From the IMG/VR virus record IMGVR_UViG_3300046092_000062, positions 62,001 to 126,000 of that record: DNA of 64,000 nt. One strand, written 5' to 3'. The position numbers were made by a program, and so were the translations under genes. This document shows, in pieces, positions 1,095-58,180 of the stretch (position 1 is the stretch's first letter; each line of letters opens with the position of its first letter). The notes under the pieces were generated by a model. It saw only the letters and a program-made list of their open reading frames with translations, was not told where the DNA came from and ran no database searches.

Positions 1095-1749
1095 GGTCCG
1101 TGCCGCAGAAGGTGGCGAAGACAGTAAACTATTTGTAAAAGACTTGGCACAAGCCTACATTAAATTTGCACACAGCAAAGGCTGAACTAGCCGCCTGATA
1201 AATGAGTATCTTGGCGAAGTTCATATCTTAGTCGAGGGTGCTGATTTATCTGGCTTATACAACGAGCCAGGTGGACACCGAATACAGCGTGTACCACCAA
1301 CAGAGCGAAAAGGACGAGTACATACCAGTACTGTTACTGTCGCTGTTGTTGATCCAAGTGTGCCGACCACTACCATAAAAGAATCTGATTTGCGGATTGA
1401 ATGGTACAGCGGAACAGGCGCAGGAGGACAACACCGTAACAAGCACCAAAACAGTGCCCGCGTTACGCACATACCTAGTGGCACAGTAGTAACAGCACAG
1501 TGTCGCAGTAGGGAAAATAGTTTGGCAGAAGCTATGCAAACTATTCGAGAAAGAGTTGACAAGATAACAAAAGACTGTTATAATAACAACTTAGCAAGCA
1601 ACAGAAAGCAACAAGTTGGTTCAGGGATGCGAGGAGACAAAATTCGCACATACCGCTTTCAGGACGATACAGTTAAAGATCACGTAAGTGACAAGACTGC
1701 AAGCGTTAAGAAAGTGTTAGCCGGCAACTTTGACTTACTTTGGAATTAA
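1078..1749 (+). CDS. prfA: RF1-type peptide chain release factor lacking domain 1, with in-frame TGA at 1183-1185 (probable readthrough)
   Basis: Frame from ATG 1078 (GAGAGG RBS): MKRVIEVRAAEGGEDSKLFVKDLAQAYIKFAHSKG*TSRLINE...RIQRVPPTERKGRVHTSTVTVAV...GTGAGGQHRNK; PxT specificity motif and GGQ. The ORF track shows only the 1360-1749 part. Confidence 0.88.
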
Positions 1750-1763
1750 AAAGGAAAATTGAC

Positions 1764-1787
1764 ATGAAACGTTCAGGTAAACGATAG
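1764..1787 (+). promoter_or_regulatory. putative 7-codon leader peptide MKRSGKR-TAG followed by two hairpins
   Basis: AAGGAA RBS at 1751-1756, ATG 1764, TAG 1785-1787; stem 1787-1795/1815-1823 and stem 1823-1828/1838-1843. Confidence 0.45.
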
Positions 1788-1849
1788 TGTCATCCTAGAC
1801 CCCCGTATGGTCCTGGATGGCACGTAAAAGAAAAATATTTACGATCCAT

Positions 1850-1924
1850 CCACAGCAAACTTTGCTGGCGAAGTACCCGGCTCTTACCCGGACTAACAGA
1901 GTTCGATTCTCTGGCTGTGGACCA
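1850..1924 (+). tRNA. atypical tRNA-Lys(CTT)
   Basis: Acceptor CCACAGC/GCTGTGG + A + CCA; anticodon arm CCGG-ctCTTac-CCGG; canonical T-arm; A8-A9 instead of T8-A9 and odd D-loop. Confidence 0.7.
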
Positions 1925-1927
1925 TAT

Positions 1928-2002
1928 GGGGGTATAACTTAGCGGCTAAAGTATCTGGCTTTTAACCAGAGAACCAGAGTTCGATTCTCTGTGCCCCTAC
2001 CA
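1928..2002 (+). tRNA. tRNA-Lys(TTT)
   Basis: TCTGG-ctTTTaa-CCAGA anticodon arm, T-arm, CCA. Confidence 0.92.
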
Positions 2003-2127
2003 TATCAAAGTACGCTAGTGCATTATAGTGAATCAGGTCGCTCCTGTGGAAGCTAAAACTGCATCAATTGCCCTGGAGGGAAAGGTCGACGGCTGCGGTT
2101 CGATTCCGTAGCGTACTTTGATATGGT
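1999..2127 (+). ncRNA. long-stem tRNA-like element A
   Basis: Perfect 19-bp inverted repeat 1999-2017/2109-2127 with T-arm GCGG-TTCGATT-CCGT abutting the 3' strand. Confidence 0.55.
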
Positions 2128-2134
2128 AAGGCAT

Positions 2135-2212
2135 GGAAGTATAGCTCAGTTGGTTTAGAGCATCGGACTTTTAATCCGAGGGTCCTGGGTTCGAGCCCCA
2201 GTGCTTCTACCA
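2135..2212 (+). tRNA. tRNA-Lys(TTT), second copy
   Basis: TCGGA-ctTTTaa-TCCGA anticodon arm, T-arm, CCA. Confidence 0.92.
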
Positions 2213-2282
2213 TATGCAAACACATTTTTCTGAACGCCAGTCATTTGCCGTGCAGAGTAGGTCAAGTGTGTTTACATATGGT
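2209..2282 (+). ncRNA. long-stem element B
   Basis: 19-position stem 2209-2227/2264-2282 with one C.A mismatch. Confidence 0.5.
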
Positions 2283-2412
2283 ACTAGAAGGAGTAATTAA
2301 CCTTCGCCATAATCGGGAGTCATGACCCGATGAACTCGTAGTCTTCTAATTGGTTAGGAAAGGCCCGTTATGGGGCTTAATGTTGGTTCGAGCCCAACCT
2401 ACAATGAGTTCG

Positions 2413-2509
2413 CATATATAAACATACTAGTCGGCGACTAAGCGTATTGCACGGTCTCTACGGAGTGAAAGGGTCAGTGGTTCGATTCCACATAGTGTGT
2501 TTTTATATG
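2413..2509 (+). ncRNA. long-stem tRNA-like element C
   Basis: CATATA-T-AAACATACTA / TAGTGTGTTT-T-TATATG stem with T-arm GTGG-TTCGATT-CCAC. Confidence 0.5.
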
Positions 2510-2642
2510 GTGCAAAAGTAATAAAGGGACTTGGGTGCCCAGAGTTTTGAAAACTCACACACTATAGTCGGCATGTGTGTCCACCGTGCATTAACCGACG
2601 TTTAAATAAAGCTAGGGCAAGCGCCAGTTAACGGTGGAGCCT

Positions 2643-2756
2643 ATATAGAAGTATTCTTGGCATAAGTCAAAGCGGGAGAAGAAGCCTAGTATCTGCAGAT
2701 GCGAAAGTTTCAGAGCTTGACTCCTCCTATGCTTGCATTTGAGAGTGCTTCTATAT
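2643..2756 (+). ncRNA. long-stem element D
   Basis: 16-bp stem 2643-2658/2741-2756 (3 G-U) followed by GGTA like elements A and B. Confidence 0.4.
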
Positions 2757-2857
2757 GGTATAGTGTAATGCGAATGCACGGGATCGCCACATAAGCCTTT
2801 GACGAGCGGTGGAACAAGGTTCAGGTGTGGTAGGAACCCACAATGCCATTTAAATTT

Positions 2858-2933
2858 GCCTTTATAGCTCAGTTGGTAGAGCAGAGGATTGAAAATCCTT
2901 GTGTCACTGGTTCGAATCCGGTTAGAGGCACCA
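2858..2933 (+). tRNA. tRNA-Phe(GAA)
   Basis: Canonical cloverleaf, ttGAAaa loop, CCA. Confidence 0.95.
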
Positions 2934-2948
2934 AATTATAGGAGTAGT

Positions 2949-4172
2949 ATGGCAAAGTTTTCGGAGAAGTTCTTCTGTCCTGCACCGTGGACAATGTTAT
3001 ACTATCATGCCAACTCTCCTAGTCCGTGCCACATGATTAAAAATTTAGAGATGGAAGCGACCCCATCTGAATATTTTAATAGCGAATGGCTTAAGAATAT
3101 AAAACAAGAAATGCAGCAAGGGATTGTTCCTGCTGCATGTTCTGGTTGTAAAGAGCGTGAGAGTCATGGACTAAAAAGCACACGCGGCGCTATTTGGAAT
3201 TACTATAATGTAGGACCTGAGCCCGAGTACGAAGATCAATGGTTCGCAAACAAGTTTACCGCAGACAGCCCAACCGTTCCAAAAAGAATTGAGCTTAGGT
3301 TTAGTAATCTATGTAATATGAAATGCAGGATGTGCGACGAAACATCTAGTTCCAGCTTTGCAGCAGAAAAAATTGAACATAAGATTAAACCAGACAAAAA
3401 CGGAAGTCATCTTGAGCATAGCGTGATACCCATCACAAAGATAGAAAACAATTCAATTGATGGCCTCATGGATACTGCCTTTCTAGCGTCAGTTCGAAAG
3501 GTATGTTTAACCGGTGGCGAACCATTTTTAATAAAAGAATATTACAGCTATCTAGATTACTTAATAGACAACGGTTTTAACAAAACACTAGACGTAGAAT
3601 TGTTTACAAATTGCAGTGTATATAATCCATTGTTTATTGATCGACTTAGTAAATTTAAAACAGTTCAAATGGTGATGAGCATCGATGCTGTGGGCAAAGC
3701 GGCTGAATATATTCGTAGTGGAACCGATTGGCCTAAAGTGGAAGCCAATGTGCTTCGACTAAATCAACTAGCAGCTCCATTTAAAATGGAAGTTACAACT
3801 GCCATATCTGCATACAGCCTAATGGACTTTGCAGAGACTGCACGATTTCTAATGAGGTTGTACACCGAAAACAACACCATTGGCGTAAAATGTTACAACG
3901 TAACTTCGCCTCCGGGTATGCACTTTAATAATCTGCCTAAGCCGTTGAGAATACAAGCAATAGATCAAATCGACAAGGCAGTAGAGATTCTAACAGCACC
4001 AAACTATTTGGTACTAGTTACAGAGTTGTTAAACGTGAAACACGCATTGACTACTTCGTCCCCGGATACACCACTGGCATTCTTTGACTATACTAAGAAG
4101 TACGACACCATTAGGGGAGAGTCGTTTGCGGAAGTGTTTTTAACATCTCCTGACAGCACAGATTACTTGTAA
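2949..4172 (+). CDS. radical SAM protein with Cys-rich (twitch/SPASM-like) N-terminus
   Basis: CNMKCRMC (CxxxCxxC), LTGGEPF motif; start moved to ATG 2949 after GGAG. Confidence 0.88.
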   Translation: MAKFSEKFFCPAPWTMLYYHANSPSPCHMIKNLEMEATPSEYFNSEWLKNIKQEMQQGIVPAACSGCKERESHGLKSTRGAIWNYYNVGPEPEYEDQWFANKFTADSPTVPKRIELRFSNLCNMKCRMCDETSSSSFAAEKIEHKIKPDKNGSHLEHSVIPITKIENNSIDGLMDTAFLASVRKVCLTGGEPFLIKEYYSYLDYLIDNGFNKTLDVELFTNCSVYNPLFIDRLSKFKTVQMVMSIDAVGKAAEYIRSGTDWPKVEANVLRLNQLAAPFKMEVTTAISAYSLMDFAETARFLMRLYTENNTIGVKCYNVTSPPGMHFNNLPKPLRIQAIDQIDKAVEILTAPNYLVLVTELLNVKHALTTSSPDTPLAFFDYTKKYDTIRGESFAEVFLTSPDSTDYL

Positions 4173-5161
4173 AGGTTGGCCACATACACAATATGGTCAA
4201 TGGGGTGGTCTTTCCAATTATACACTGCTGGTAGATGATGTTTAATCTCCATAATTACAAACGCTTGCAGCAATGAATGGCTTCGTAGAAAATCTGTTAA
4301 CTTATAGGTTTTTCTAAATTGTTCAATTTCGCTAAACCATTGTAAGTTTTGCTGGGCATCAATGTATGTTTGGTGGAATGACTTTGTGTAACTAGTATCA
4401 AATGTGCCAGCCCCGATAGAGTTAACAAAATTGTCGAACCAAGTGGGAAATCGATCGCTAACAATATCAGTTAACGAGATCTGGTACAGGTGATCTATTC
4501 GGTCTTTGGGTAGTACATAGGTTTGTTCGTTAACTTCATGCCCGTTGTGTTGATTCCGTACACGATACCATTCAGAATACCATTCCAGCCCGCCGGATAA
4601 CTTATCATAGTCGATGCCTCTAAGGAATGGGAAAATTTCGTAATACGATTCAACAAACAAATTCCGCGCCTCAATAGAGTCTTGACAATTAAAACTATCA
4701 AACCCAAACCGACGTTCGACTATTTGATTCGCCTTAAAGAAAACAGGCCATTTGGTGATAGTATTTAATGATCCGTATTTGCGATCGTCGAGTACATCGT
4801 TATCATTGATAATAACAATAACTGGATCGGGATCACTTAATAGTATCGATCGGATAGCCATGTCCGGTCTTGACACATCAAAAGATGTTGGTATGTCATG
4901 ACAGTTGAGTAGAAAAACTTTTTTCTCTTTTGGTTGATTGTATGTCATCCAAATTAGATGTTGATGAATACTTTGATGAGTTGGTATTCTTGCGTGTAAG
5001 TGCGCAGTACCTATTCCTCCAAACATCTCACTAACTTCTTTGTTTACTGGATCATCAACGGTTTGACTAGCTGAGTCAATTTCACTTTTGTTGATGCACC
5101 AATGTATATAACTACCCGACGACCCCGGCGGGTATAATAGATAAATGTTCTTTGACAGCAT
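4163..5161 (-). CDS. hypothetical, sulfotransferase-like P-loop N-terminus
   Basis: MLSKNIYLLYPPGSSGSYI; start moved to 5161, TAAATA on minus strand at 5166-5171. Confidence 0.6.
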   Translation of the reverse strand: MLSKNIYLLYPPGSSGSYIHWCINKSEIDSASQTVDDPVNKEVSEMFGGIGTAHLHARIPTHQSIHQHLIWMTYNQPKEKKVFLLNCHDIPTSFDVSRPDMAIRSILLSDPDPVIVIINDNDVLDDRKYGSLNTITKWPVFFKANQIVERRFGFDSFNCQDSIEARNLFVESYYEIFPFLRGIDYDKLSGGLEWYSEWYRVRNQHNGHEVNEQTYVLPKDRIDHLYQISLTDIVSDRFPTWFDNFVNSIGAGTFDTSYTKSFHQTYIDAQQNLQWFSEIEQFRKTYKLTDFLRSHSLLQAFVIMEIKHHLPAVYNWKDHPIDHIVYVANLYK

Positions 5162-5182
5162 GGAATATTTATTGAAATAAAT

Positions 5183-5256
5183 GCTCTTATAGGTAAATGG
5201 TATATCGGCGCTGTGGTATAGCGCAGTCCTAAGTTCGATTCTTAGTAGGAGCACCA
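5183..5256 (+). tRNA. tRNA-Thr(GGT)
   Basis: Acceptor GCTCTTA/TAGGAGC, anticodon arm GCGCT-gtGGTat-AGCGC (unusual G32), CCA. Confidence 0.82.
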
Positions 5257-5271
5257 CGTGATAAGTATCTA

Positions 5272-6183
5272 ATGCAACATAATTTTTTACCATGTAAATA
5301 TCCAATTATTTGTGCCCCGATGAATAGAGTGTCGGACGTTAAGCTAGCACTTGCAGTTCATAGAGCTGGGTGCTTGCCGAGCCTTGTGGTCCACAATCAT
5401 GATGAATCTGAATTAGCTAACGATGTGGCTAAGATTGTGAACGAAATGAAAGAGTTCACAGAGCTGTCGGGATCAAGCGATTTTATACTTGCACTTAGAT
5501 CAGATTTTTTATTAAAAGATACCAAGCTGCTCCCTGCGATGTTAAAGTACAGGCCTGCGTATGTTGAATTCTTTGACAATATTGATTGGTCTGACATAAA
5601 GGTGGTCAACCTTATTAAGCTGCTTAGAACATACAGAATTAAAATAATCTATAAAATACTTGCACCTAGAATATTGGGCAAGTTAGTGGAATTTGTTGAC
5701 GCTATTGACGTTAAGGGCCCTGATGCCGCTGCCCGTGTGAATACCACAACTACTACTAGTTTAGTAGATCGGATTAAGCAACTGAAATCCGCTAATCCAC
5801 ATTTGCACATTATTGCATCTGGTGGTATGTCATCGCAACAGGATGTGCAGGCATGTATTGACGCTGGCGCAAGTGCAGTGGCATTGGGCACAGTATTTGC
5901 CATGTCAGAAGAGTCGTCGATTTCAGTTGAGACAAAAATGAAAATGATTGAATCAACATTCTCACAAGTTGTGAACATTGGCGAAGCCCAACAAAATGCG
6001 TTAGTGTTTACAAACGAAAAAGATGTTGACGGCAACCACACTGTGGGACTAGAACTTGGTATAAAAAGCCCAGTCGCTGGTCATGTGTTTGTGGGGAAAG
6101 CAATTGATTCAATTGACTCAATTAAAACAGTGGAAACAATCGTGTCGGAGCTAACTGGGGTAACTGATGCAAAAACCCGATGA
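5272..6183 (+). CDS. nitronate monooxygenase / FabK-like FMN TIM-barrel oxidoreductase
   Basis: YPIICAPM N-terminus, IIASGGM and AVALGTVF FMN-binding motifs. Confidence 0.75.
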   Translation: MQHNFLPCKYPIICAPMNRVSDVKLALAVHRAGCLPSLVVHNHDESELANDVAKIVNEMKEFTELSGSSDFILALRSDFLLKDTKLLPAMLKYRPAYVEFFDNIDWSDIKVVNLIKLLRTYRIKIIYKILAPRILGKLVEFVDAIDVKGPDAAARVNTTTTTSLVDRIKQLKSANPHLHIIASGGMSSQQDVQACIDAGASAVALGTVFAMSEESSISVETKMKMIESTFSQVVNIGEAQQNALVFTNEKDVDGNHTVGLELGIKSPVAGHVFVGKAIDSIDSIKTVETIVSELTGVTDAKTR

Positions 6184-7006
6184 TGTAACTATTTGTTACT
6201 TCGGGGGCAGCGGCGGCTTCTTTTGCTTGTACCTTCTTTTGCTTAGTAACCAATACCAATGCTGCTTCGAAAATGGGTCAGCTGACGCACACGTAACAAA
6301 AGTTACGCAATGGGATATACAGAATGTTTCCAATTGGAAAGATAATGAGATATGGCCTAACAACAGCAACACCAAAGCAGAGAGTTTCGATGTTAGCAAA
6401 GTCTTTTTTCTTTGTAACCCATTGCAATTAACGCAAAAGCCCGGAGTGCAAGATGACGTGCTATCTAAATGTCCAGGAAAGAAAATTCTATTGTACACAG
6501 ATTTAGAAACACAATGGCATCTAACAAAAACTAAACGTGCCTACTGGTTTCAAAAAGGACAGCAGCTAAACGGACAAGGACCAAGTTGGCAGACAGCCGA
6601 ATATCGTGAAGAACAAGTGCTAATATGGTATAATAACATCAGACAGGATAGCTGGCCTCAAATCTCCAAGGCAGATGATTTTTACAATCTTCCGCAGGAA
6701 ATACAGGATATTTGTATAACTGACTATAGCATGTGGGAAGTCCTTGACATTGGCAAATTTGACAATGATGACTACCGACCCCGTGGAGTAGAGTTTAGGG
6801 GAGACATAGTGTACAAGAAAGTAGTGGACATTATGCCTAAGATGGACATAGTGGTTAAGCTACAAGATTTGATTAAAACACAAGGCCGTGTGTTGTTCGA
6901 CCAGCTTGGTATTGAGACAAACAAAGACACGCAAAAGTTCATAATCCAGTACCTGTCGTTGCACACAGTCGAGCAGCGGAAATTCCTATTAGGCAAGCAC
7001 ATATAA
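6167..7006 (+). CDS. hypothetical, sulfotransferase-like P-loop N-terminus
   Basis: ICYFGGSGGFF; 279 aa. Confidence 0.55.
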   Translation: MQKPDDVTICYFGGSGGFFCLYLLLLSNQYQCCFENGSADAHVTKVTQWDIQNVSNWKDNEIWPNNSNTKAESFDVSKVFFLCNPLQLTQKPGVQDDVLSKCPGKKILLYTDLETQWHLTKTKRAYWFQKGQQLNGQGPSWQTAEYREEQVLIWYNNIRQDSWPQISKADDFYNLPQEIQDICITDYSMWEVLDIGKFDNDDYRPRGVEFRGDIVYKKVVDIMPKMDIVVKLQDLIKTQGRVLFDQLGIETNKDTQKFIIQYLSLHTVEQRKFLLGKHI

Positions 7007-7031
7007 TCAATTTGGCAACCAACTCATAATT

Positions 7032-8240
7032 ATGATTAATTTAAAACTAGGATATTACTCATGCAACGGAGTCACGTTCGATTCTAAGATTGCTGCATGT
7101 GTGTATTCTGTGCAGCACAATAACGCATTAGTTACGTGGACATTCAACGACCGAGAGTTTAATCAGCACAACTGGACACAAGAACCTGACCTAACACTGG
7201 ATCAATTGTATGATATTAGATCAAAGCAGCTAAGAGATCAGTACGACTATGTTATATTGAGCTACAGCGGCGGCGCCGACAGTCACAATATCCTAATGAG
7301 CTTTATTCGTCAAGGCCTCCATATAGACGAGATTGTGGTAAACACAACTGAGAAAGCTAGTGCAAGATTCACAGAGTTAGATAAAAACAATCTTGACCCC
7401 CGCAATGCAGGAGCAGAGCATGTGTTTCAGACGTTGCCTAGACTACGTGAAATTCAGGGATTGATCCCTAAAACAAAGATTAGTGTGTTGGATTTGTCGG
7501 ATCATCTATTTGAGAGTTTTTCAAAAGCCGATGATGCTAGCTGGGTATTAGAAAAGCGCGAAAGCCTAAACCCAGCTGGAGTAACACGGTTTAATTATCT
7601 GCACTTTGATCAATTGCGCAAACAGTTTGATAAAGATAAAAAAATTGCATTAGTGCTAGGAATCGAAAAGCCCAGGGTGTTTATTAGACACGGACAGTTG
7701 GTACTACGGTTTACAGACCGTGCGGCCAACATTGTTACTGTAGCAGAACACGTTAAAGAATACACAAATAGCACAGTAGAATTCTTCTACTGGAGTCCAG
7801 ATGCAGTGCCAGTGGTTATCAAACAAGCGCACACTATCAAGCGATGGCTTGAGGCTAATCCAGACAAACAGCATCTCTGGGACGTTGACACACTAACACC
7901 GGAGATGGTGAGACTAGTGCATGAGCGAGTGTACAGACCACTGCTATACACTACGTGGGACAACAGTTGGTGGCAATCAAACAAAGCAGTTAACGATTGG
8001 ACAAGCGAGTTTGACCAGTGGTTTAAGGATGGGTACAGTGATACTCGTGCTTACCAAGTGTGGGCAGAGGGTATTGAGTATGTTCGTGAAATTTTGCATC
8101 CTTACATAAACACTACTCATCTTGTTAATGGTCAAGCAGACGGCCTTGACATATTTGTTAAAGAGTACTTAATTGGACCAGTGAAAAATCTTTGTCCAGA
8201 ATTAAAGAATAAACTGTATAGGCATTTGCAAAATAAATAA
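7032..8240 (+). CDS. PP-loop (adenine nucleotide alpha hydrolase) family ATPase
   Basis: ILSYSGGADS PP-loop motif. Confidence 0.78.
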   Translation: MINLKLGYYSCNGVTFDSKIAACVYSVQHNNALVTWTFNDREFNQHNWTQEPDLTLDQLYDIRSKQLRDQYDYVILSYSGGADSHNILMSFIRQGLHIDEIVVNTTEKASARFTELDKNNLDPRNAGAEHVFQTLPRLREIQGLIPKTKISVLDLSDHLFESFSKADDASWVLEKRESLNPAGVTRFNYLHFDQLRKQFDKDKKIALVLGIEKPRVFIRHGQLVLRFTDRAANIVTVAEHVKEYTNSTVEFFYWSPDAVPVVIKQAHTIKRWLEANPDKQHLWDVDTLTPEMVRLVHERVYRPLLYTTWDNSWWQSNKAVNDWTSEFDQWFKDGYSDTRAYQVWAEGIEYVREILHPYINTTHLVNGQADGLDIFVKEYLIGPVKNLCPELKNKLYRHLQNK

Positions 8241-8532: not shown

Positions 8533-8608
8533 GCGGATGTAGCTCAGCTGGTAGAGCACAACGTTGCCAACGTCGAGGTCGTCGGTTCGAACCCGATCAT
8601 CCGCTCCA
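8533..8608 (+). tRNA. tRNA-Gly(GCC)
   Basis: GCGGATG acceptor, ttGCCaa loop, T73-CCA. Confidence 0.95.
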
Positions 8609-8613
8609 TAAAT

Positions 8614-8690
8614 GGCTCTCTAGTTCCAATTGGCAGAACATCGGATTCCAAATCCGAGTGTTGGGGGTTCGAATCCCTCGGGGGTCGCCA
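8614..8690 (+). tRNA. tRNA-Trp(CCA)
   Basis: TCGGA-ttCCAaa-TCCGA arm, G73-CCA; D-stem GTTC/GAAC. Confidence 0.93.
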
Positions 8691-8695
8691 ATATA

Positions 8696-9145
8696 ATGAA
8701 ATCAAAATTCTCCGATTCCCAATTACGCACAATCACGAAAGTGGTTACATACCGCGTGATTATCACATGTAGTCACATCATCAATGGGTTTATTGTTAGT
8801 GGTAGTCTTGCTCTTGGATTGCAAATTGCAGGCCTAGCAGCAGTAATTAACAGTTTGTTATTTTGGCTACACGAGCGCATGTGGAATAGGCTACAATGGA
8901 AACGTCTCCATTTAAACAGTTCTACGTTCGTAGAAACCAATCCTAGAAGCATCAGTAAGATATTAACTTGGCGCATTTTCTCAATGTCTAGTAATTTTCT
9001 CATCCCTTACTTGATAACTGGATCATGGGGATCAGCAGCGGCATTCCTTGGGATAGCAGTAATAGTTAACATGGCTCTATACTATCTACATGAACGAGTG
9101 TGGAACATAGTTAAGTGGGGTAAACAGGTCAACGGCCTTTGGTGA
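8696..9145 (+). CDS. membrane protein with two tandem DUF2061-like repeats
   Basis: RTITKVVTYR...LHERMWNRLQW and RSISKILTWR...LHERVWNIVKW; start moved to ATG 8696. Confidence 0.72.
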   Translation: MKSKFSDSQLRTITKVVTYRVIITCSHIINGFIVSGSLALGLQIAGLAAVINSLLFWLHERMWNRLQWKRLHLNSSTFVETNPRSISKILTWRIFSMSSNFLIPYLITGSWGSAAAFLGIAVIVNMALYYLHERVWNIVKWGKQVNGLW

Positions 9146-9469: not shown

Positions 9470-10105
9470 ATGGGGACCAAGTGGTCCGCGGTTGAAAAAC
9501 AGAATTACATGGCTAACCCTTTTATGAATACATTAACGTTTCAGACCCCGGTACGTATAGTTAATAACTGGGATAAAACCACACAAGTAGCAAAGCACTG
9601 CATCGATCTAGTAAAGAGTCAATCGGCCAGTATCACTAGGGAATACAAGTACAGCGATTACGGATATCACTATGAACTAGGATCAACTGGCACAGTTAGT
9701 CACATCACTAACGGTAGTGCAGAATGGTATTCAGTGACTGGTAAGCTAATAGAATCTACCATGCGCTTTTTGCCGCTAATGCTAGATGACCTAGCAGACC
9801 TTGACCCTACGTTTGCTAGCATTAACTACATGGTGGGCAATGGCGCAGAGCATAGGGATCACGAAAGTCAGCAAACTGGGTTCAATTATTTTTTTGCTGA
9901 TTGTGACAGCACTACCTACGCAAGAAACGCAGACATCTGCGAATCCTATCCTAGCGTAAAAGACACAGGGTGGATCCTTGATATCCAACAACTACACAGC
10001 ATCTCAAATACAAACGAACGCATTTGGTTTAACCTTAGATTTGGTAAACCCTTTGCATATTGCAGAGATTGGTTTGCAGATCATTTGGTATTAACTTATG
10101 AATAA
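9470..10105 (+). CDS. hypothetical, possible 2OG-Fe(II)/cupin oxygenase
   Basis: HRD...LHS facial-triad-like spacing. Confidence 0.5.
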   Translation: MGTKWSAVEKQNYMANPFMNTLTFQTPVRIVNNWDKTTQVAKHCIDLVKSQSASITREYKYSDYGYHYELGSTGTVSHITNGSAEWYSVTGKLIESTMRFLPLMLDDLADLDPTFASINYMVGNGAEHRDHESQQTGFNYFFADCDSTTYARNADICESYPSVKDTGWILDIQQLHSISNTNERIWFNLRFGKPFAYCRDWFADHLVLTYE

Positions 10106-11273
10106 AATTATCTCAATTGAGCCTGCAATCGATCCAGTCAATCGTCCTACATTTTTGTTGGACTGGGAACTAACAATGAAGTGCAATTTGGATTGCGACT
10201 ACTGCTCGACTGGCATTGAGTACGGTGGTCACGACAACAGCACAGCACATCCTCCTAAAGACGAATGCTTAAAAACCATTGACTTCATGTTTGCTTATGC
10301 AGACAAGTACATGCAGCTAAAGCCCAAATGGCAGCGCATGGTGGTTCTCAATGTATACGGCGGCGAAAGTATATTTCATCCAGACATTGTTGAGATCCTA
10401 GAGCAGGTGCGAGCAAGACACACATACGATTGGCCATTGACTGTTACCTGCACAAGTAACGCAGTGGCTGGTAAGAATCTTTGGGAAAAGGTTGCAAACT
10501 TAATTGATGAGTTTACCGTTAGTTTTCACAGCAGTGCATTGCCTAAACAGAGACAGCAAGTACTAGACAACATACTTTATAATAAGGCTATCGGCAGGCG
10601 CCAAAAGGTGGTGTTTGTGATGCACAACGATCCTGTTTTGTGGGATATTAGCCAACAAGCTATTGAGTTTTGTAAAACACACGATGTTAGGTATGTAGTT
10701 AAAGCAAACGACACCCCTACACCTCAGTGGCAGTATAACAAAGAACAGTTTATTTACTTTCAAGATTACTACAAGTCACGCACACCAGCTAAGAGTAGGG
10801 ATGCTCTAACAAAGGCGCTGGATGCAGTGGAAACTGACACAGTTGGCATGGGTAAGGTCGGTCGAGGTTGTTGTGGTGGCCGAAAGCTATGCACTAACCA
10901 AGACCTACAACACCCAACAGCCTTTGTACCACATGCAGATTTCATGGGTTGGAGTTGCAGTGTTAACTGGTACTTCTTGTACATTAAACAGATCAATGGC
11001 GATGTGTACACAAACAAGGATTGCCGTATGCGCTTTGATGGTACAGTTGGTCCAATTGGTAATTTGTCAAATGGTAATCTTATACTAGAACAAGTGCAGA
11101 AAAACATTGACAACAAAGCCATGCCTGTTATACAATGTGCTAGAACAAGATGTATATGCGGTTACTGTGCTCCAAAAGCGCAAGACCCAAAAGATTTTGA
11201 AGCTATTATGGATAAACACATAGTTGACAAGCAAGTCAAATTTGTTTATAATAACAGCTTAGATGATAAGTAA
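10098..11273 (+). CDS. radical SAM protein with Cys-rich C-terminus
   Basis: CNLDCDYC, YGGES; C-terminal CCGG..C, CSV, CARTRCICGYC. Confidence 0.88.
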   Translation: MNKIISIEPAIDPVNRPTFLLDWELTMKCNLDCDYCSTGIEYGGHDNSTAHPPKDECLKTIDFMFAYADKYMQLKPKWQRMVVLNVYGGESIFHPDIVEILEQVRARHTYDWPLTVTCTSNAVAGKNLWEKVANLIDEFTVSFHSSALPKQRQQVLDNILYNKAIGRRQKVVFVMHNDPVLWDISQQAIEFCKTHDVRYVVKANDTPTPQWQYNKEQFIYFQDYYKSRTPAKSRDALTKALDAVETDTVGMGKVGRGCCGGRKLCTNQDLQHPTAFVPHADFMGWSCSVNWYFLYIKQINGDVYTNKDCRMRFDGTVGPIGNLSNGNLILEQVQKNIDNKAMPVIQCARTRCICGYCAPKAQDPKDFEAIMDKHIVDKQVKFVYNNSLDDK

Positions 11274-11284
11274 TTTATCACAAT

Positions 11285-11368
11285 GCGTAAGTGGTGGAAT
11301 GGTATACACTCTGGTCTTAGAAGCCAGCGCCGCGAGGATTGAGAGTTCGAGTCTCTCCTTACGCACCA
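11285..11368 (+). tRNA. tRNA-Leu(TAG)
   Basis: Variable arm, ctTAGaa loop, A73-CCA. Confidence 0.93.
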
Positions 11369-11398
11369 TTTATTATTTTAAGTTTTTCTAAAAAGTGC

Positions 11399-11464
11399 TT
11401 GACACTTAATGAAACTCTTGTTATAATAGATACATGTTAAGAAATTAACAAACGTTCTTTAAAA
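11399..11464 (+). promoter_or_regulatory. consensus sigma70 promoter plus boxA-like antitermination site
   Basis: TTGACA(11399)-17-TATAAT(11422); CGTTCTTTAAAA at 11453-11464 resembles rrn boxA TGCTCTTTAACA. Confidence 0.8.
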
Positions 11465-11465
11465 A

Positions 11466-11750
11466 TTTGTTTTGATGTAAAGTAAGCAGGCGTACCACGC
11501 TAATAGGTTGCGTGACTCTTGTCGAAAATTTGGTCCAGATAGAAAGCTGGGAACTCTTGAGTAGTCTGTAAGCGGCTACTGTGGCGTCTAACACCTATGA
11601 GTTAGAAACGATCTGTTCCACGTAGCAATACGCAGGAAGAATGATTGCAATAGAGTAGAGTAACGCTCTACCGGTTGCATGAGGGTCAACTGAAAGACGC
11701 AAGTCTTACCCGTTACCTTGTAACCAGGTAAAAAGAGGCATCAAAATAAA
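11466..11750 (+). ncRNA. unidentified multi-hairpin ncRNA (285 nt)
   Basis: 12-bp closing stem 11466-11477/11739-11750; at least 6 internal hairpins, several with GNRA loops; no ORF. Confidence 0.6.
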
Positions 11751-11764
11751 TTTCTAAATAACTG

Positions 11765-11838
11765 TTGACAGCAAATGAAAAGTTTGCTACAATAGCAGCT
11801 TAGTTAGACATTGTGCTAACTAACAAAGTTCTTTAAAA
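11765..11838 (+). promoter_or_regulatory. sigma70 promoter plus boxA-like site
   Basis: TTGACA(11765)-17-TACAAT(11788); AGTTCTTTAAAA at 11827-11838. Confidence 0.8.
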
Positions 11839-11855
11839 TAGATACGTATAAGAAG

Positions 11856-11970
11856 TTCTTATACACATGCACATAAATGCGTAGGCCACGCAGATATGGT
11901 TGGATTCATAGCTTGGGCTATTGCCCAGGTTGGCAGGTTCGAAACCTGTGAGTGTGCAGTTGTATAAGAA
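11856..11970 (+). ncRNA. long-stem tRNA-like element E
   Basis: TTCTTATACA/TGTATAAGAA and TGCACAT/GTGTGCA stems, T-arm GCAGG-TTCGAAA-CCTGT, D-like and variable-like hairpins, no CCA. Confidence 0.5.
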
Positions 11971-11974
11971 TTTA

Positions 11975-12875
11975 GGGCAGTTTAATGTCCTGCAAAGAGT
12001 ATGGTTCGCCCAGCTTGATGCGAAGAATAACTGTGGTGACACAGCCAAAGGAGGTATGCCTACATAACTCCGCTAGCAATAGTTCATTTAGACAAGCCTG
12101 CTCACTCCTGTGAGGGAGCGTTCACTCAGCGACGGGTGGATGTAACAGTGACGCAAAGTGCATAGGGAAGAACGTTTGCTTACAAGCCTGAGATTGCATC
12201 AAGGGGAACTTGAGTAGATGGAAAGTAACAGGTGGTGCTGACTTCTATGCGAAACCAACTTTGTTAATTGGTATGAGAAAGGGTAGTGTATTGGTTCGAA
12301 GGGTTGCACCTAAGAGCTCGTATGCAGTTTTAGTGGTTGGTGGACGTAGTAATACGAACATTGGTCGCAAAAGACGACTGAGTAGCTCGCAAGGCAAAAG
12401 GTACGTGGTGTGTTGTATTGTGTATTCCAAAAGATTATGCAGCAACTGAGTCAGCACATCGCAGTAGGTTGATATAGTTCATTGGTAGAACATCTGTCTC
12501 TTAAACAGAATGCGGTGGGTTCAATTCCCACTATCATTACAAAACGCAAAGACTGACTCGGTCGTATGTGAAAAGCATCTAATACTTGAGCCGCAAGGTA
12601 ATCAAGTCAGACGTAACTCGCAAGGTGAAATCTGTTTATGCAGGAAGTTTCGTAGCTACTTAGCGGTGGTGAATGGCTCTAAAGGTCAACGGGATAGAAA
12701 GCGTAGAATAGCATACGGCGACAAGACTACTGCCTGTCTTTAAAAACGGCGATGCTGACAGCAGACTAGACTACTATGCAAATAGGGTTTAGTGGAAGTC
12801 GGAAGAAAGTAGACTCGCAAGGTTTACAATAATGTCCGAGGTGTTGTTAGGTTAGGATGTATTCTCAGTCCGCCA
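11975..12875 (+). ncRNA. probable GOLLD large ncRNA (about 900 nt)
   Basis: ORF-free, GNRA (GCAA/GAAA) hairpin-rich, inside a phage tRNA cluster; segments such as GAAAGTAACAGGTGGTGCTGAC and 3' TATTCTCAG match my recollection of GOLLD; ends approximate. Confidence 0.65.
12468..12539 (+). tRNA. tRNA-Lys(CTT)-like module embedded in the large ncRNA, no CCA
   Basis: D-arm GTTC-attggta-GAAC, anticodon arm TCTGT-ctCTTaa-ACAGA, T-arm GTGGG-TTCAATT-CCCAC; weak acceptor, ends ACAA. Confidence 0.7.
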
Positions 12876-12969
12876 ACTTATATGCAAACACATTAGTAAA
12901 AGTCTGTAAAAGGACGAAGCAACTGACTCTGTAATAGGAGCTGTTTGCTCAGTGTGTTTACATATAAGT
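12876..12969 (+). ncRNA. long-stem element F
   Basis: ACTTATATG-C-AAACACATT / AGTGTGTTT-A-CATATAAGT, nearly the same stem as element B. Confidence 0.55.
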
Positions 12970-13056
12970 ATGCTTTGATGGTTAAAGTTGGATAGGTAGT
13001 GGGTAGCTTGTGAAATCATAGTAGCAAGTCCACAGCAACCCAAACGGTAGAAGCAG

Positions 13057-13129
13057 CTTATTTGAAAGCACATTTGTTCCTGAAAGATTTTACGGTTTGG
13101 ATGGTTCAGCAAATGTGTTTCCAAATAAG
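13057..13129 (+). ncRNA. long-stem element G
   Basis: CTTATTTG-A-AAGCACATTTG / CAAATGTGTTT-C-CAAATAAG. Confidence 0.5.
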
Positions 13130-13224
13130 AATTTGGTGATTGTGTGGAGCTAAGGCGATTCGCTGGACTATGAAGCACGACGAGAGCGTTGAACTTGAAA
13201 TAGGTTCAACCACCAGACTAATAT

Positions 13225-13300
13225 GGACGGTTGGCAGAGCGTTTATGCGCCGGATTGCAAACTCGGTATAAGGTAGGTTAGACTCCTACACCGTCCTCCA
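13225..13300 (+). tRNA. tRNA-Cys(GCA)
   Basis: ttGCAaa loop, T73-CCA; non-canonical T-loop TTAGACT. Confidence 0.85.
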
Positions 13301-13595
13301 TTTTTGCTAGTTTTTTAAAACTAGTTGTGACGTATGGAGATGAGAGATTGCACCTCTAGTTAGCACTTGACACGCTTACTGGAATATTAATCGTGATCCA
13401 GTGACCCGAGTCCCCTGGCTTAATTGCCTTGTTTGTTGACTCTCGGAAATATTGGTATCCTCTGCTTGTTGTATTTTGCTTTAGAAAACAGTTGCCTTGA
13501 AAATCAATTATATCTAATGTACATTGCACATTGTCCCGCAATTGACTTGCCATACGTTGCACCCCTATTAAAATCAAACAGAAAGGAACTCGATT

Positions 13596-14162
13596 ATGAA
13601 ATTTACACTTCGCAAAGCAAACGCCCTACAAAACACAATCCAGGAACACATCAAGACGATCGACATCGCATTGACGGTTTCCCTTAACGAGTTCCAAAGT
13701 TCAACTTCGGTGCTTGGTACCGCACGTGAGACATTGGTCCGCAACGATGCCAAGCGCACACAGTTGACCAAGGCCTTGTACGCAGTCCGTGCAAAGGTTG
13801 GTCGCGCCAACACAGAAGCCGGTGTTGCAGATCTGTTGACAGACGCTGCATTCATTGACAAGCGTTTGGGCTTCTTAAAAGGCCTAACTGAAAGCAAGGT
13901 TGTCGAAGAAATCGCAGTCATTGAAGGCAAGCTAGAAAAGCTTCGCGCACAAGACAACAAGAACCGTGTTTACGGTTACAACGACACAGTTGACACTGGT
14001 GTGCTTGAAGCGGACCAGATTGAAGGTTACAAGGCAGAAATGCGTGACCTGAAGAAACAAAAGCAAAGCATTAATGACAAGGTCCTGGAACTTAACGTTC
14101 GCACCGAGATTGAGTTGGATGCAGATACCGTTTCTTTGCTACAGGCAGAGCAACTGGTATAA
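13596..14162 (+). CDS. hypothetical coiled-coil protein
   Basis: 188-aa ORF, AAAGGA RBS, strong codon bias. Confidence 0.75.
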   Translation: MKFTLRKANALQNTIQEHIKTIDIALTVSLNEFQSSTSVLGTARETLVRNDAKRTQLTKALYAVRAKVGRANTEAGVADLLTDAAFIDKRLGFLKGLTESKVVEEIAVIEGKLEKLRAQDNKNRVYGYNDTVDTGVLEADQIEGYKAEMRDLKKQKQSINDKVLELNVRTEIELDADTVSLLQAEQLV

Positions 14163-14169
14163 ATATTGA

Positions 14170-14244
14170 AGCAGAGTAGAGAAATGGTATCTCACCAGGC
14201 TCATAACCTGGAGACAGTTGGTTCGATTCCAGCCTTTGCATCCA
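14170..14244 (+). tRNA. tRNA-Met(CAT), initiator-like
   Basis: CCAGG-ctCATaa-CCTGG arm; 1:72 mismatch (A.A); CCA. Confidence 0.85.
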
Positions 14245-14250
14245 ATACAT

Positions 14251-14325
14251 GCCTTGATAGCTCAGGGGTAGAGCGTCTCCTTTACACGGAGAGGGTCCGC
14301 GGTTCGAAACCGTGTCAAGGTACCA
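14251..14325 (+). tRNA. tRNA-Val(TAC)
   Basis: TCTCC-ttTACac-GGAGA arm, CCA. Confidence 0.93.
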
Positions 14326-14333
14326 AAGGAAAT

Positions 14334-14407
14334 GCGGGATTAGTTTAATGGTAAAACGAGATCCTTCCAAGTTCAAGTCAGCGGTTCGATTCCGCTATCC
14401 CGCTCCA
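14334..14407 (+). tRNA. tRNA-Gly(TCC)
   Basis: GCGGGAT/ATCCCGC acceptor, T73-CCA, ctTCCaa loop (weak anticodon stem). Confidence 0.88.
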
Positions 14408-14442
14408 TAACATTACCCCGCCTGGTGCGGGGTTTGCCATTT

Positions 14443-14898
14443 ATGAAAACAAAATATCAACAACTATACATGGACTGGGCGCATCGTGCAGCAGAACTAA
14501 GTCATGCACGTAGGCTCAAGGTAGGAGCAGTTATTGTCAAGGACGATGTGGTCATTTACGGCTACAATGGCATGCCAGCAGGGTGGGATAACAACTGCGA
14601 AGAACACCCTAAGATTGTTAACAAACAAACCTATGCCATTGAAGAAGATACAACTAGATTAGTAACACGACCTGAGGTATTACATGCTGAATCAAATGCT
14701 ATTGCAAAACTGGCGAAGTCTCCTAACGTTGGTAACGGGGCTGACTTATTTGTTACTCACAGTCCTTGTATCCACTGTGCCAAGCTCATTTTTCAGTCAG
14801 GTATTCGTCGTGTATTTTATGGTGCAAACTATCGCGATGATGCAGGAGTCCAATTCCTCAGGAGTTCGGGCATAACAGTTACACAAATTGAAGAATAA
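14443..14898 (+). CDS. dCMP deaminase
   Basis: HAE and PCxxC zinc motifs (LHAESNA, HSPCIHC). Confidence 0.92.
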   Translation: MKTKYQQLYMDWAHRAAELSHARRLKVGAVIVKDDVVIYGYNGMPAGWDNNCEEHPKIVNKQTYAIEEDTTRLVTRPEVLHAESNAIAKLAKSPNVGNGADLFVTHSPCIHCAKLIFQSGIRRVFYGANYRDDAGVQFLRSSGITVTQIEE

Positions 14899-57685: not shown

Positions 57686-58175
57686 TGGGCAAGTAGTCGA
57701 GGCAATGGTAGCAGTAGATTTAGCTGCACAATATGTCAAAACCTGGACTAAAAATGAAACTCAAAAACTAATAAAAAGCGAACCCTTGATCATCCCCACT
57801 AAGGATGGATGGCAAGTTGGTAAGCACTCTATAAAACAGTCAGCAGGTGTTTGGCAACTATTCAACGACTTCACTGAGTTGATGGCCACATTCACTTGCA
57901 AACAATCTGCTGTGACGTACTCGTTGCTATATCAAACTGGCCGCTTGAAGCAAGCACAGAATTTATACCGAAACGATACGACACTAAGTAAGTTAACACA
58001 GGATAAAATCTATTACGTACACAACAGAAATCGAGCAATTAAGCGCGATGATATGTTTACAGTTGACGTATTAGATGCTAGAATAACAGATAATAGTATC
58101 ATGTTAGATCTAGCTAAAATAGATCTTGAAAAAACTTTAAATCAGGCTAAATATCTAAAAGGTATCTGGGAATAA
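57648..58175 (+). CDS. hypothetical protein
   Basis: 175 aa ORF, true start uncertain. Confidence 0.6.
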   Translation: MAKSRTRKNPITNGQVVEAMVAVDLAAQYVKTWTKNETQKLIKSEPLIIPTKDGWQVGKHSIKQSAGVWQLFNDFTELMATFTCKQSAVTYSLLYQTGRLKQAQNLYRNDTTLSKLTQDKIYYVHNRNRAIKRDDMFTVDVLDARITDNSIMLDLAKIDLEKTLNQAKYLKGIWE

Positions 58176-58180
58176 CCACT

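What the first reader, a model, noticed from the sequence alone, without database searches (positions are those of the whole stretch)
11399..11750. 285-nt GNRA-rich ncRNA with rRNA-style transcription signals
Seen: perfect TTGACA-17-TATAAT promoter, boxA-like site, then a 12-bp closing stem enclosing hairpins CACGC/GCGTG, AGTAG/CTACT, TCTAAC/GTTAGA, CGTA-GCAA-TACG, TAGAG-GTAA-type arm within TGCAA/TTGCA, AAGAC-GCAA-GTCTT and TTACC/GGTAA. It is its own transcription unit just upstream of the probable GOLLD. Inference: an ornate stable RNA, possibly a partner of GOLLD; I cannot assign it to a known family.
Basis: partly seen in the sequence, partly recalled or inferred. Interest (0 to 1): 0.72.

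Follow-up and report, generated by a model that had tools for sequence, protein, structure and literature searches.

The report
New abundant structured RNA beside phage GOLLD
A freshwater jumbo phage encodes a roughly 290-nucleotide, highly folded non-coding RNA next to its GOLLD RNA; it matches no known RNA family, is very abundant in lake metatranscriptomes, sits behind ribosomal-RNA-style transcription signals, and has no known function.

Summary
Window 11464-11753 (+) encodes a ~290-nt RNA. A 15-bp terminal helix closes about ten inner helices.

**Signals.** It lies behind a perfect extended -10 sigma-70 promoter (11399-11427), a GAAA-capped hairpin and a boxA-like GTTCTTTAAAAAT. In the 320-kb phage genome, only this RNA and GOLLD (12405-12871, 198.8 bits) carry that leader.

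**Known families.** Rfam 15 gives no hit, even at E<=10.

**Relatives.** Eight distinct variants (roughly 88-96% identical) occur in freshwater phage and metagenome contigs.
- 98.5% of pair cells stay paired. Seven pairs changed on both sides, against 2.8 in shuffles.
- The RNA diverges 8%, against 24% at neutral codon sites of the neighbouring gene.

**Expression.** In one RNA library, depth is 1,700-5,800 over the RNA against 0-5 on the flanking gene. The depth steps fall at about 11463 and 11753, the base of the terminal helix.

**Link to GOLLD.** It is accessory, not an obligate GOLLD partner.
- Complete GOLLD phages lack it.
- One carries an "empty site" that keeps only the helix.
- In three contigs a different unknown RNA follows it.

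**Verdict.** This is a real, expressed, lineage-restricted new ncRNA class. How it is expressed and matured is inferred with moderate confidence. Its function, a trans-acting scaffold, assembly or decoy RNA, is speculative.

The parts
11399..11427 (+). Promoter P1: TTGACA, 17-nt spacer, TG-extended TATAAT
   Evidence: 12/12 matches, TG present. The promoter is present upstream of all eight variants, although the flanking context differs.
11436..11449 (+). Leader hairpin GTTAA-GAAA-TTAAC, in the boxB position
   Evidence: Sequence read. The same hairpin precedes boxA in at least 93 viral-contig stretches.
11454..11466 (+). boxA-like element GTTCTTTAAAAAT. By my count it matches E. coli rrn boxA GCTCTTTAACAA at 10 of 12 positions. 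Its last bases overlap the first pairs of the terminal helix.
   Evidence: Variants in relatives read GCTCTTTAAAA and GATCTTTAACAA.
11464..11753 (+). The mature ~290-nt structured RNA. It is the full-length match to covariance model R1.
   Evidence: 339 bits. The metatranscriptome depth steps and contig ends fall at about 11463 and 11753.
11464..11478 (+). P1 terminal helix, 5' strand. It pairs with 11738-11752.
   Evidence: G-U changes to G-C at 11469/11747, A-U to G-U at one pair and U-G to U-A at another. The helix is retained in the empty-site allele L096.
11738..11752 (+). P1 terminal helix, 3' strand
11485..11523 (+). P2 hairpin. Its loop UAAUAGGUU contains AUAGGU, which is complementary to ACCUAU in the P5 loop.
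   Evidence: pairs 11492/11516 (G-C to C-G) and 11486/11522 (GC/GU/AU) covary.
11533..11552 (+). P3 hairpin
   Evidence: mostly invariant.
11554..11558 (+). P1b, CTCTT pairing with AAGAG at 11733-11737. It closes the multi-helix junction.
   Evidence: invariant.
11560..11580 (+). P4 hairpin with a UGUAAG loop
   Evidence: 11560/11580 changes A-U to U-A, plus two single-sided compatible changes.
11587..11606 (+). P5 hairpin, invariant in all eight variants together with its flanking junctions (11581-11613)
11610..11646 (+). P6 arm. The inner CGUA-GCAA-UACG tip is variable and is replaced by an 11-nt-longer hairpin in L077/L078.
11647..11678 (+). P7 arm (TGCAA/TTGCA outer stem, GAGU/RCUC inner stem)
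   Evidence: G-C changes to A-U at one pair, plus four single-sided compatible changes.
11683..11711 (+). P8 arm (GGGU/ACCC outer stem, AAGAC-GCAA-GUCUU tip), almost invariant
11715..11729 (+). P9 hairpin with a UUGUAAG-type loop
   Evidence: the closing pair changes A-U to G-C.
11765..11838 (+). Second promoter-hairpin-boxA cassette (P2), driving GOLLD
12405..12871 (+). Conserved 3' half of GOLLD, with tRNA-Lys embedded at 12468-12540. This is context, not part of the new RNA.

Best explanation
Window 11464-11753 encodes a previously undescribed, lineage-restricted stable ncRNA. It belongs to freshwater jumbo phages and lies in their tRNA/GOLLD island.

Shown:
- It is non-coding and folds into a terminal 15-bp helix plus about ten inner helices that are conserved and covary.
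- It is under purifying selection.
- It accumulates in environmental RNA to levels hundreds of times above the neighbouring mRNA, within an order of magnitude of GOLLD.
- Its ends lie at the base of the terminal helix.

Inferred mechanism of production:
- Host sigma-70 RNA polymerase starts at a consensus extended -10 promoter.
- The leader hairpin plus boxA recruits the host NusB/NusE antitermination machinery, as in rrn operons. The untranslated transcript thereby escapes Rho and continues into GOLLD.
- The roughly 30-nt leader and the spacer are removed, and the RNA is trimmed back to its terminal helix, which protects both ends.

Inferred function (weakest step):
- It is a trans-acting, compactly folded accessory RNA of the phage's translation-related RNA island.
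- It acts as a scaffold, a self-assembling particle or a decoy that binds a host or phage macromolecule.
- It is not a cis-regulator and not an obligate GOLLD subunit.
For: Structure:
- 91 consensus pairs. 98.5% of cells are paired, against about 42% when partners are slid.
- 7 pairs and 12 cells changed on both sides, against 2.8 and 3.4 in shuffles (0-1 of 500 shuffles reach the observed values).
- The G-U pairs are compatible only with the + strand.

Selection:
- 8% divergence between the window and L002, against 24% at four-fold sites of the adjacent radical-SAM gene.
- No + strand open frame longer than 35 codons, and indels shift the frames.

Expression:
- In run X7, depth is 1,734-5,778 across 11410-11731. 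It is 0-5 on the radical-SAM gene, 0-36 downstream of GOLLD and 980-21,555 on GOLLD.
- The RNA is also present in X16 and X18.
- Contig ends and bin averages place the depth steps at about 11463 and 11753.

Signals:
- Perfect promoter.
- The promoter-hairpin-boxA cassette occurs only before this RNA and GOLLD in the genome.
- In relatives the cassette precedes GOLLD, tRNA genes and other structured RNAs.
- No terminator before the GOLLD promoter.

Independence from GOLLD.

Precedent:
- GOLLD and ROOL from phage tRNA islands form RNA-only nanocages (PMC12286853).
- The under-200-nt manA RNA motif forms cages through kissing loops and GNRA contacts (bioRxiv 10.64898/2026.07.01.735769).
Against: - Only eight close variants are known, so covariation rests on few events. 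Two of the seven double changes lie in the P6 tip, where the alignment was fitted by the model.
- Variable columns are no rarer in unpaired than in paired regions (17% each).
- The expression data are assembled contigs without strand information, from mixed communities. Contig ends can reflect graph branching rather than RNA ends.
- No experiment links boxA here to Nus factors, and the host is unknown.
- The RNA is dispensable: complete relatives and an empty-site allele lack it.
- Nothing bears directly on its function. No conserved protein neighbour was seen.
Confidence: 0.55

Rival explanations
1. It is an obligate partner of GOLLD, either a subunit, cap or cargo of the GOLLD nanocage or an RNA that base-pairs with GOLLD.
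For: It is adjacent to GOLLD in 5 of 8 variants and within about 5 kb in a sixth. It shares a unique leader cassette with GOLLD. Its abundance is similar to GOLLD's in X7.
Against: - Complete GOLLD phages lack it (G001, G007).
- The empty-site allele keeps GOLLD.
- Run X17 has GOLLD at depth 420-3,778 but 0 for this RNA.
- A different RNA follows it in L076-L078.
- There is no complementarity to GOLLD beyond chance: 7-mers 20 against 17.8 expected, and none of 9 nt or longer.
Confidence: 0.1
2. It is a phage counter-defence or host-takeover decoy RNA. On this reading it is a compact fold that sequesters a host nuclease, ribosome-associated factor or immune sensor. This would explain why it is accessory and patchily distributed.
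For: - Presence and absence are patchy among near-identical loci, including an empty site.
- It has a strong host-type promoter and very high copy number.
- It lies in a tRNA island. From general knowledge, such regions supply replacements for tRNAs cut by host anticodon nucleases.
- Two repeated UUGUAAG loops could be paired protein-binding sites.
Against: There is no direct evidence. No defence-related or partner protein is consistently adjacent. No resemblance to a known decoy RNA was seen in the Rfam scans.
Confidence: 0.15
3. It is a by-product of operon processing. On this reading it is a structured spacer, comparable to an rRNA external transcribed spacer, that helps fold or process the GOLLD precursor in cis and merely survives as a stable fragment.
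For: There is no terminator between it and GOLLD, and the promoters are in tandem. The terminal helix persists even when the body is absent.
Against: - Loops and junctions are invariant over long blocks (11581-11613, 11679-11712), which points to selection on the body itself.
- It also occurs upstream of a different RNA, with GOLLD 5 kb away.
- It accumulates to GOLLD-like levels, while the spacer beyond 11753 is close to zero.
Confidence: 0.1
4. It is a selfish or mobile RNA-gene insertion, an intron-like or hairpin-targeting element that landed in the loop of a pre-existing hairpin.
For: In L096 the 264-nt body (11476-11739) is missing, the helix arms are joined as a 9-bp hairpin and all flanks are conserved.
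Against: - There is a single copy per genome, and none elsewhere in the empty-site phage.
- I saw no terminal repeats or target duplication at the body's ends.
- It matches no intron or ribozyme family.
- No RNA joint across 11476/11739 appears in four metatranscriptomes.
- Deletion by slippage across the base of a large hairpin explains the allele equally well.
Confidence: 0.07
5. It is a chance fold or a small protein-coding gene.
For: The minus strand has stop-free stretches of up to 54 codons.
Against: Compensatory changes, conservation three times stronger than neutral, indels that shift the frames, promoter orientation, G-U pairs readable only on the + strand, and RNA abundance far above the flanking mRNA.
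Confidence: 0.02

Closest known systems
GOLLD RNA (Rfam RF02032) and ROOL RNA
   Same: Both are encoded in phage tRNA islands. Both are large multi-helix 'ornate' folds that are highly expressed and of unknown function. In this phage GOLLD shares the identical promoter-hairpin-boxA leader type (PMC12286853).
   Different: - There is no sequence or model similarity.
- This RNA is 290 nt, against more than 800 nt for many GOLLD RNAs (PMC12286853) and, from my own recollection, roughly 580 nt for ROOL.
- It carries no embedded tRNA.
- Its distribution is very narrow: eight close variants.
- Its oligomeric state is unknown.
Bacterial rrn operon leaders (boxB-boxA antitermination, terminal processing helices around 16S and 23S rRNA)
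   Same: - A strong sigma-70 promoter.
- A hairpin followed by a boxA-like GTTCTTTAAAAA, or GCTCTTTAAAA in relatives.
- An untranslated structured product.
- 5' and 3' ends paired in a long helix, with leader and spacer removed.
- Tandem promoters with no terminator between products.
   Different: - The product is not rRNA.
- The mature ends lie at the base of the helix rather than inside it, as RNase III would leave them.
- Nus-factor dependence is untested.
- No boxC was identified.
T4 species 1 and species 2 stable RNAs (from my own knowledge, not tested here)
   Same: They are small stable RNAs of unknown function, encoded within a phage tRNA gene cluster and matured from tRNA-cluster transcripts.
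   Different: Those RNAs are about 120-140 nt. Homology could not be tested because no sequence or model was available in the tools.
manA RNA motif and phi29 pRNA (self-assembling phage RNAs)
   Same: They are multi-hairpin phage RNAs with GNRA loops and complementary hairpin loops that could mediate kissing contacts. Here the pair is the P2 loop AUAGGU with the P5 loop ACCUAU. manA cage formation is reported in bioRxiv 10.64898/2026.07.01.735769.
   Different: There is no Rfam hit to either. The loop complementarity is only 6 nt and falls to 5 in L002. It could be intramolecular or due to chance. Assembly is untested.

Membership tests
GOLLD (RF02032) | Match to the conserved 3'-half covariance model at or above 150 bits | tested here: not met
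   11440-11770 gives no Rfam hit at E<=10. The GOLLD hit lies separately at 12405-12871. blastn between the two finds nothing better than E 0.8.
GOLLD (variable 5' domain of other lineages) | Homology to a 5' domain of GOLLD RNAs from other clades | tested here: inconclusive
   Model R1 found nothing in about 20 GOLLD loci of this phage group. GOLLDs of Lactobacillales or Mycobacterium could not be fetched.
Any Rfam 15 family (ROOL, raiA, OLE, HEARO, RNase P, 6S, SRP, tmRNA, pRNA, manA, ribozymes, introns) | Covariance-model match | tested here: not met
   Zero matches at E<=10 on 331 nt, both strands, with permissive filters. Only noise appears in the 2.2-kb scan.
rrn-type antitermination leader | boxA consensus (E. 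coli GCTCTTTAACAA) downstream of a promoter | tested here: met
   GTTCTTTAAAAA at 11454, 10 of 12 by my count. Relatives carry GCTCTTTAAAA and GATCTTTAACAA. The motif with a promoter occurs only twice in 320 kb.
rrn-type antitermination leader | Hairpin (boxB) upstream of boxA | tested here: met
   GTTAA-GAAA-TTAAC lies 4 nt upstream. The hairpin is conserved in at least 93 viral stretches.
rrn-type antitermination leader | Binding of NusB/NusE and Rho resistance | not testable with these tools
   This needs biochemistry or genetics, and the host is unknown.
Stable RNA matured via a terminal helix | 5' and 3' ends of the accumulated RNA coincide with a conserved end-to-end helix | tested here: met
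   The helix is 11464-11478 with 11738-11752. The depth steps and contig ends lie at about 11463 and 11753. Caveat: these are assembled contigs, not raw reads.
tRNA / tmRNA | ARAGORN or Rfam detection | tested here: not met
   Searches report nothing in 11399-11750.
Protein-coding gene | A conserved open frame on the transcribed strand | tested here: not met
   The longest + strand stop-free run is 35 codons or fewer. Indels of 1 and 11 nt occur among variants.
Mobile element or intron | Multiple copies or insertion sites, an intron or ribozyme core, or spliced junctions | tested here: not met
   There is one copy per genome and none in the empty-site phage. No joint at the body's ends appears in RNA contigs. 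No Rfam intron or ribozyme hit was found.

The most novel reading that the evidence does not exclude
This RNA is one of a large, unexplored set of 'boxA-driven' ornate RNAs in freshwater jumbo phages. It would self-assemble, for example through the P2-P5 loop complementarity and its GCAA tetraloops, into an RNA-only particle. Alternatively it would dock onto or into the GOLLD nanocage. On this reading these phages hijack the host's ribosomal-RNA antitermination and folding machinery to mass-produce RNA nanostructures.
Probability: 0.15. Interest if true: 0.85.

Novelty: new variant of a known kind. Interest (0 to 1): 0.62.

Why it matters
GOLLD and ROOL were recently shown to form RNA-only nanocages, yet their function is still unknown (PMC12286853). 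This work adds three things.
- A second, unrelated structured RNA is made from the same unusual leader, at comparable abundance and in the same island. It gives a new handle on what these islands do.
- The natural presence/absence alleles allow comparison between otherwise similar loci.
- The promoter-hairpin-boxA cassette occurs in at least 93 viral-contig stretches, ahead of tRNA genes, GOLLD and many unassigned structured RNAs. This suggests that phages routinely borrow the host rRNA antitermination system for their non-coding RNAs. It also provides a simple sequence tag for finding more such RNAs.

At 290 nt the RNA is a tractable target for chemical probing and cryo-EM.

Tried and rejected
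Searches for the same RNA elsewhere:
- Cultured phages: blastn with the RNA found no match.
- Cultured phages: tblastn with the neighbouring radical-SAM protein found no match.
- Cultured phages: blastn with the GOLLD 3' part found no match.
- 54 loci around relatives of the radical-SAM gene: only the near-identical phages carry the RNA.
- Two stem-tolerant degenerate patterns in viral contigs returned only the same clade.
- The metagenome scan added four variants and two chance hits, L073 and L075.
- A genome-contig scan with a valid pattern found nothing.

Model R1 searches:
- 63 + 83 related loci and 15 whole phage records gave no divergent homologue.

Other tests that gave nothing:
- Similarity to GOLLD or to two other cassette-driven RNAs: none.
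- Extended complementarity to GOLLD: not above shuffles. An earlier attempt timed out.
- Relatives cannot be drawn for a virus record.
- The supplements of the 2023 IMG/VR structured-RNA catalogue (PMC10690425) are not held. I therefore could not check whether this RNA is among its 10,006 candidates.
- A possible P7-loop pairing with 11711-11716 was rejected because neither side is conserved.

Full report
**Context.** The window is bases 62001-126000 of a 320,767-bp IMG/VR virus record, estimated 92% complete. This part of the genome is a tRNA/ncRNA island. It holds sixteen tRNA genes and a GOLLD RNA at 12405-12871 (RF02032, 198.8 bits against a cutoff of 150). tRNA-Lys is embedded in GOLLD at 12468-12540. 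Sequencing runs that hold this DNA are freshwater, aquatic or wastewater metagenomes.

**Checking the observation.** The sequence and the consensus scan confirm a 12/12 promoter at 11399-11427 with a TG-extended -10. A second promoter lies at 11765-11793.
- Consensus promoters of this type occur 21 times in the genome against 0.7 in shuffles. Twenty are on the + strand. They are therefore real signals, not chance.
- Downstream of the first promoter lie the hairpin GTTAA-GAAA-TTAAC (11436-11449) and GTTCTTTAAAAAT (11454-11466).
- A promoter followed by a hairpin and this boxA-like word occurs at only two places in 320 kb. One is before the RNA in question and one is before GOLLD.
It gives -85.3 kcal/mol and z = -2.71.

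**Known families.** Rfam 15 gives nothing for this region. This holds at gathering thresholds, at E<=10 in a 2.2-kb scan (unrelated noise only) and at E<=10 on the 331-nt region alone. ARAGORN finds nothing there.

**Relatives.** Eight distinct variants were found, roughly 88-96% identical. All come from uncultured phage or freshwater metagenome contigs.
- Relatives of the neighbouring radical-SAM-like gene gave 54 viral loci. Only the two near-identical phages (L002, L003) carry the RNA, at 92% identity.
- Anchoring on a conserved GOLLD 5' word, and on invariant words of the RNA itself, added L065/L068 and L071.
- A metagenome scan added L072, L074, L076, L077 and L078.
- A covariance model (R1: 289 positions, 91 pairs) finds each of them at 315-361 bits.
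- R1 finds nothing else in about 1.4 Mb of related loci.
- R1 finds nothing in 13 other whole phage records, five of them at least 98% complete. The two whole records of L002 and L003 each hold one copy.
- The RNA is single-copy where present.

**Structure.** On the eight variants, 98.5% of pair cells form standard pairs, against 35-45% when partners are slid by 1-3 columns.
- Seven pairs carry changes on both sides, against 2.8 +/- 1.3 in shuffles. The covariation score exceeds all 500 shuffles.
- Clear compensatory events are 11492/11516 (G-C to C-G), 11560/11580 (A-U to U-A), the P9 closing pair (A-U to G-C) and an inner P7 pair (G-C to A-U). The terminal helix shows G-U changing to G-C.
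- Two of the seven double changes lie in the P6 tip, where L077 and L078 carry a longer replacement hairpin. They should be discounted. They show instead that P6 is a variable peripheral arm.
- Several G-U pairs would be A-C mismatches on the other strand. The + strand is therefore the functional one.
- Long blocks are invariant: 11581-11613 (P5 and its junctions) and 11679-11712 (P8).
- The P2 loop (AUAGGU) and the P5 loop (ACCUAU) are complementary over 6 nt. This could be a tertiary or intermolecular kissing contact, but it could also be chance.

**Selection and coding potential.** Between the window and L002, four-fold degenerate sites of the adjacent gene differ at 24%. The RNA differs at about 8%. 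That is roughly three-fold constraint, on top of the pairing-preserving pattern of changes. The + strand has no stop-free run longer than 35 codons. Indels of 1 and 11 nt occur among variants.

**Expression.** Logan contigs of four freshwater metatranscriptomes were laid on 9800-14600.
- In X7, word depth is 0-5 over the radical-SAM gene and 40 over the tRNA-Leu bin.
- It is 1,734 and 5,778 over the two bins that hold the RNA, and 353 over 11732-11892.
- It is 980-21,555 over GOLLD and 36 falling to 0 beyond it.
- The bin averages fit a depth of about 2,600 that starts at 11463 and stops at 11753.
- One contig starts at 11463, as shown by the from_end values at 11486 and 11531. Another runs 11585-11753 with no differences.
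- These ends coincide with the base of the terminal helix.
- X16 and X18 show the same pattern at lower depth. X17 holds GOLLD but not this RNA.
- Caveats: these are unstranded assembled contigs from mixed communities, and contig ends can arise from graph branching.

**Relation to GOLLD.**
- The RNA is immediately upstream of GOLLD in five variants.
- In L076, L077 and L078 it is followed by another promoter-hairpin-boxA cassette and a different, also unassigned, roughly 340-nt RNA with its own long closing stem. In L076, GOLLD lies about 5 kb away.
- Several GOLLD phages lack the RNA altogether.
- In L096 the P1 promoter, hairpin, boxA, the outer part of the helix (ATTTGTTTTGA|ATCAAAATAAA), the spacer and the GOLLD promoter are all present. 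The 264-nt body (window 11476-11739) is absent. L096 comes from a 177-kb record rated 100% complete, and the RNA is nowhere else in it.
- Complementarity between the RNA and GOLLD does not exceed shuffles.
- The RNA is therefore an accessory module of the island, not an obligate GOLLD partner.

**How it is probably made (inference).**
- The cassette resembles the rrn leader, with a hairpin followed by boxA. E. coli boxA is GCTCTTTAACAA. Here the word is GTTCTTTAAAAA, and relatives carry GCTCTTTAAAA and GATCTTTAACAA.
- The cassette occurs in at least 93 viral-contig stretches, ahead of tRNA-like genes, GOLLD and many unassigned structured RNAs.
- Established knowledge of rrn antitermination is that NusB/NusE binding to boxA makes RNA polymerase resistant to Rho on untranslated RNA. 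That gives a plausible reason for the cassette.
- No terminator lies between the RNA and the GOLLD promoter. Read-through, followed by removal of leader and spacer, fits the depth profile.

**Function.** Nothing here tests function directly.
- By analogy with GOLLD and ROOL (PMC12286853) and with the cage-forming manA motif (bioRxiv 10.64898/2026.07.01.735769), I favour a trans-acting compact RNA that works as a scaffold, an assembly or a decoy.
- The patchy distribution is what one expects of accessory host-takeover or counter-defence functions.
- Rival readings are scored separately: obligate GOLLD partner, mere processing by-product, mobile insertion, and coding or chance.

**Novelty.** This is a new RNA class with no detectable relative among described families. 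It belongs to a recognised kind, the large structured ncRNAs of phage tRNA islands. I could not check whether it is among the 10,006 unnamed candidates of PMC10690425, because the supplements are not held.

Noticed in passing
L080-L162 (viral contigs); window 11436-11466 and 11801-11838: The leader cassette is a GTTAAGNAATTAAC hairpin, 2-7 nt, then GYTCTTTAAAA, placed behind TTGACA-17-TAnAAT promoters. It occurs in at least 93 IMG/VR stretches with 63 distinct downstream regions. It precedes tRNA-like genes, GOLLD and many unassigned structured RNAs.
   Followed up: partly
L078:10770-11115; L076 about 8600-8830 (-); L077:800-1087: A different RNA of roughly 340 nt has its own cassette and an 18-bp closing stem (CTCTATATGTAAACGCAC / GTGTGTTTACATATAGAG). 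It has no Rfam hit. About 15 other cassette-driven RNAs begin with the same CATATA-hairpin-TATATGTAAAC signature.
   Followed up: partly
L096:3300-3420: Empty-site allele. Promoter, leader, outer helix arms, spacer and GOLLD promoter are conserved, but the 264-nt body (window 11476-11739) is missing. The phage record is rated complete and lacks the RNA elsewhere.
   Followed up: yes
window 12470-12541: RNA-library contigs join 12470 to 12541, skipping the tRNA-Lys embedded in GOLLD. Depth is 2,296 in X7, and the joint is also seen in X16-X18. These are either GOLLD variants without the tRNA or an excised form.
   Followed up: no
L063 about 6990-7130; L056; L069: Upstream of GOLLD in these phages lies a tRNA-like gene with a long structured insertion (GTGGCGAGTCTAGGG...GGTTCGAATCCCAATCTCTACACCA). 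Other phages (L059, L062, L067) have different G+C-rich structured segments in the same position.
   Followed up: no
L009:1363-1661: A more distant relative encodes a tmRNA (beta_tmRNA 127 bits, permuted tmRNA 128 bits). This is a weak hint that this broad phage group infects Betaproteobacteria.
   Followed up: no
window 11107-11252: Two further consensus promoters (11107-11136, 11224-11252) lie inside the 3' end of the radical-SAM-like ORF, just upstream of tRNA-Leu (11285-11368). Neither has a boxA leader.
   Followed up: no
G000:C1:57153-57328 and 58002-58179 (outside the window): Short similarities to the 5' hairpin of the L078 RNA and to another cassette-driven RNA (L063:4281-4800). They suggest further unassigned RNAs in this phage's own island.
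   Followed up: no
window 10098-11273: A 391-aa protein gives only a sub-threshold Radical_SAM hit (27.9 bits against a cutoff of 29.5). It is conserved in 54 viral loci and has no tblastn match in cultured phages.
   Followed up: no
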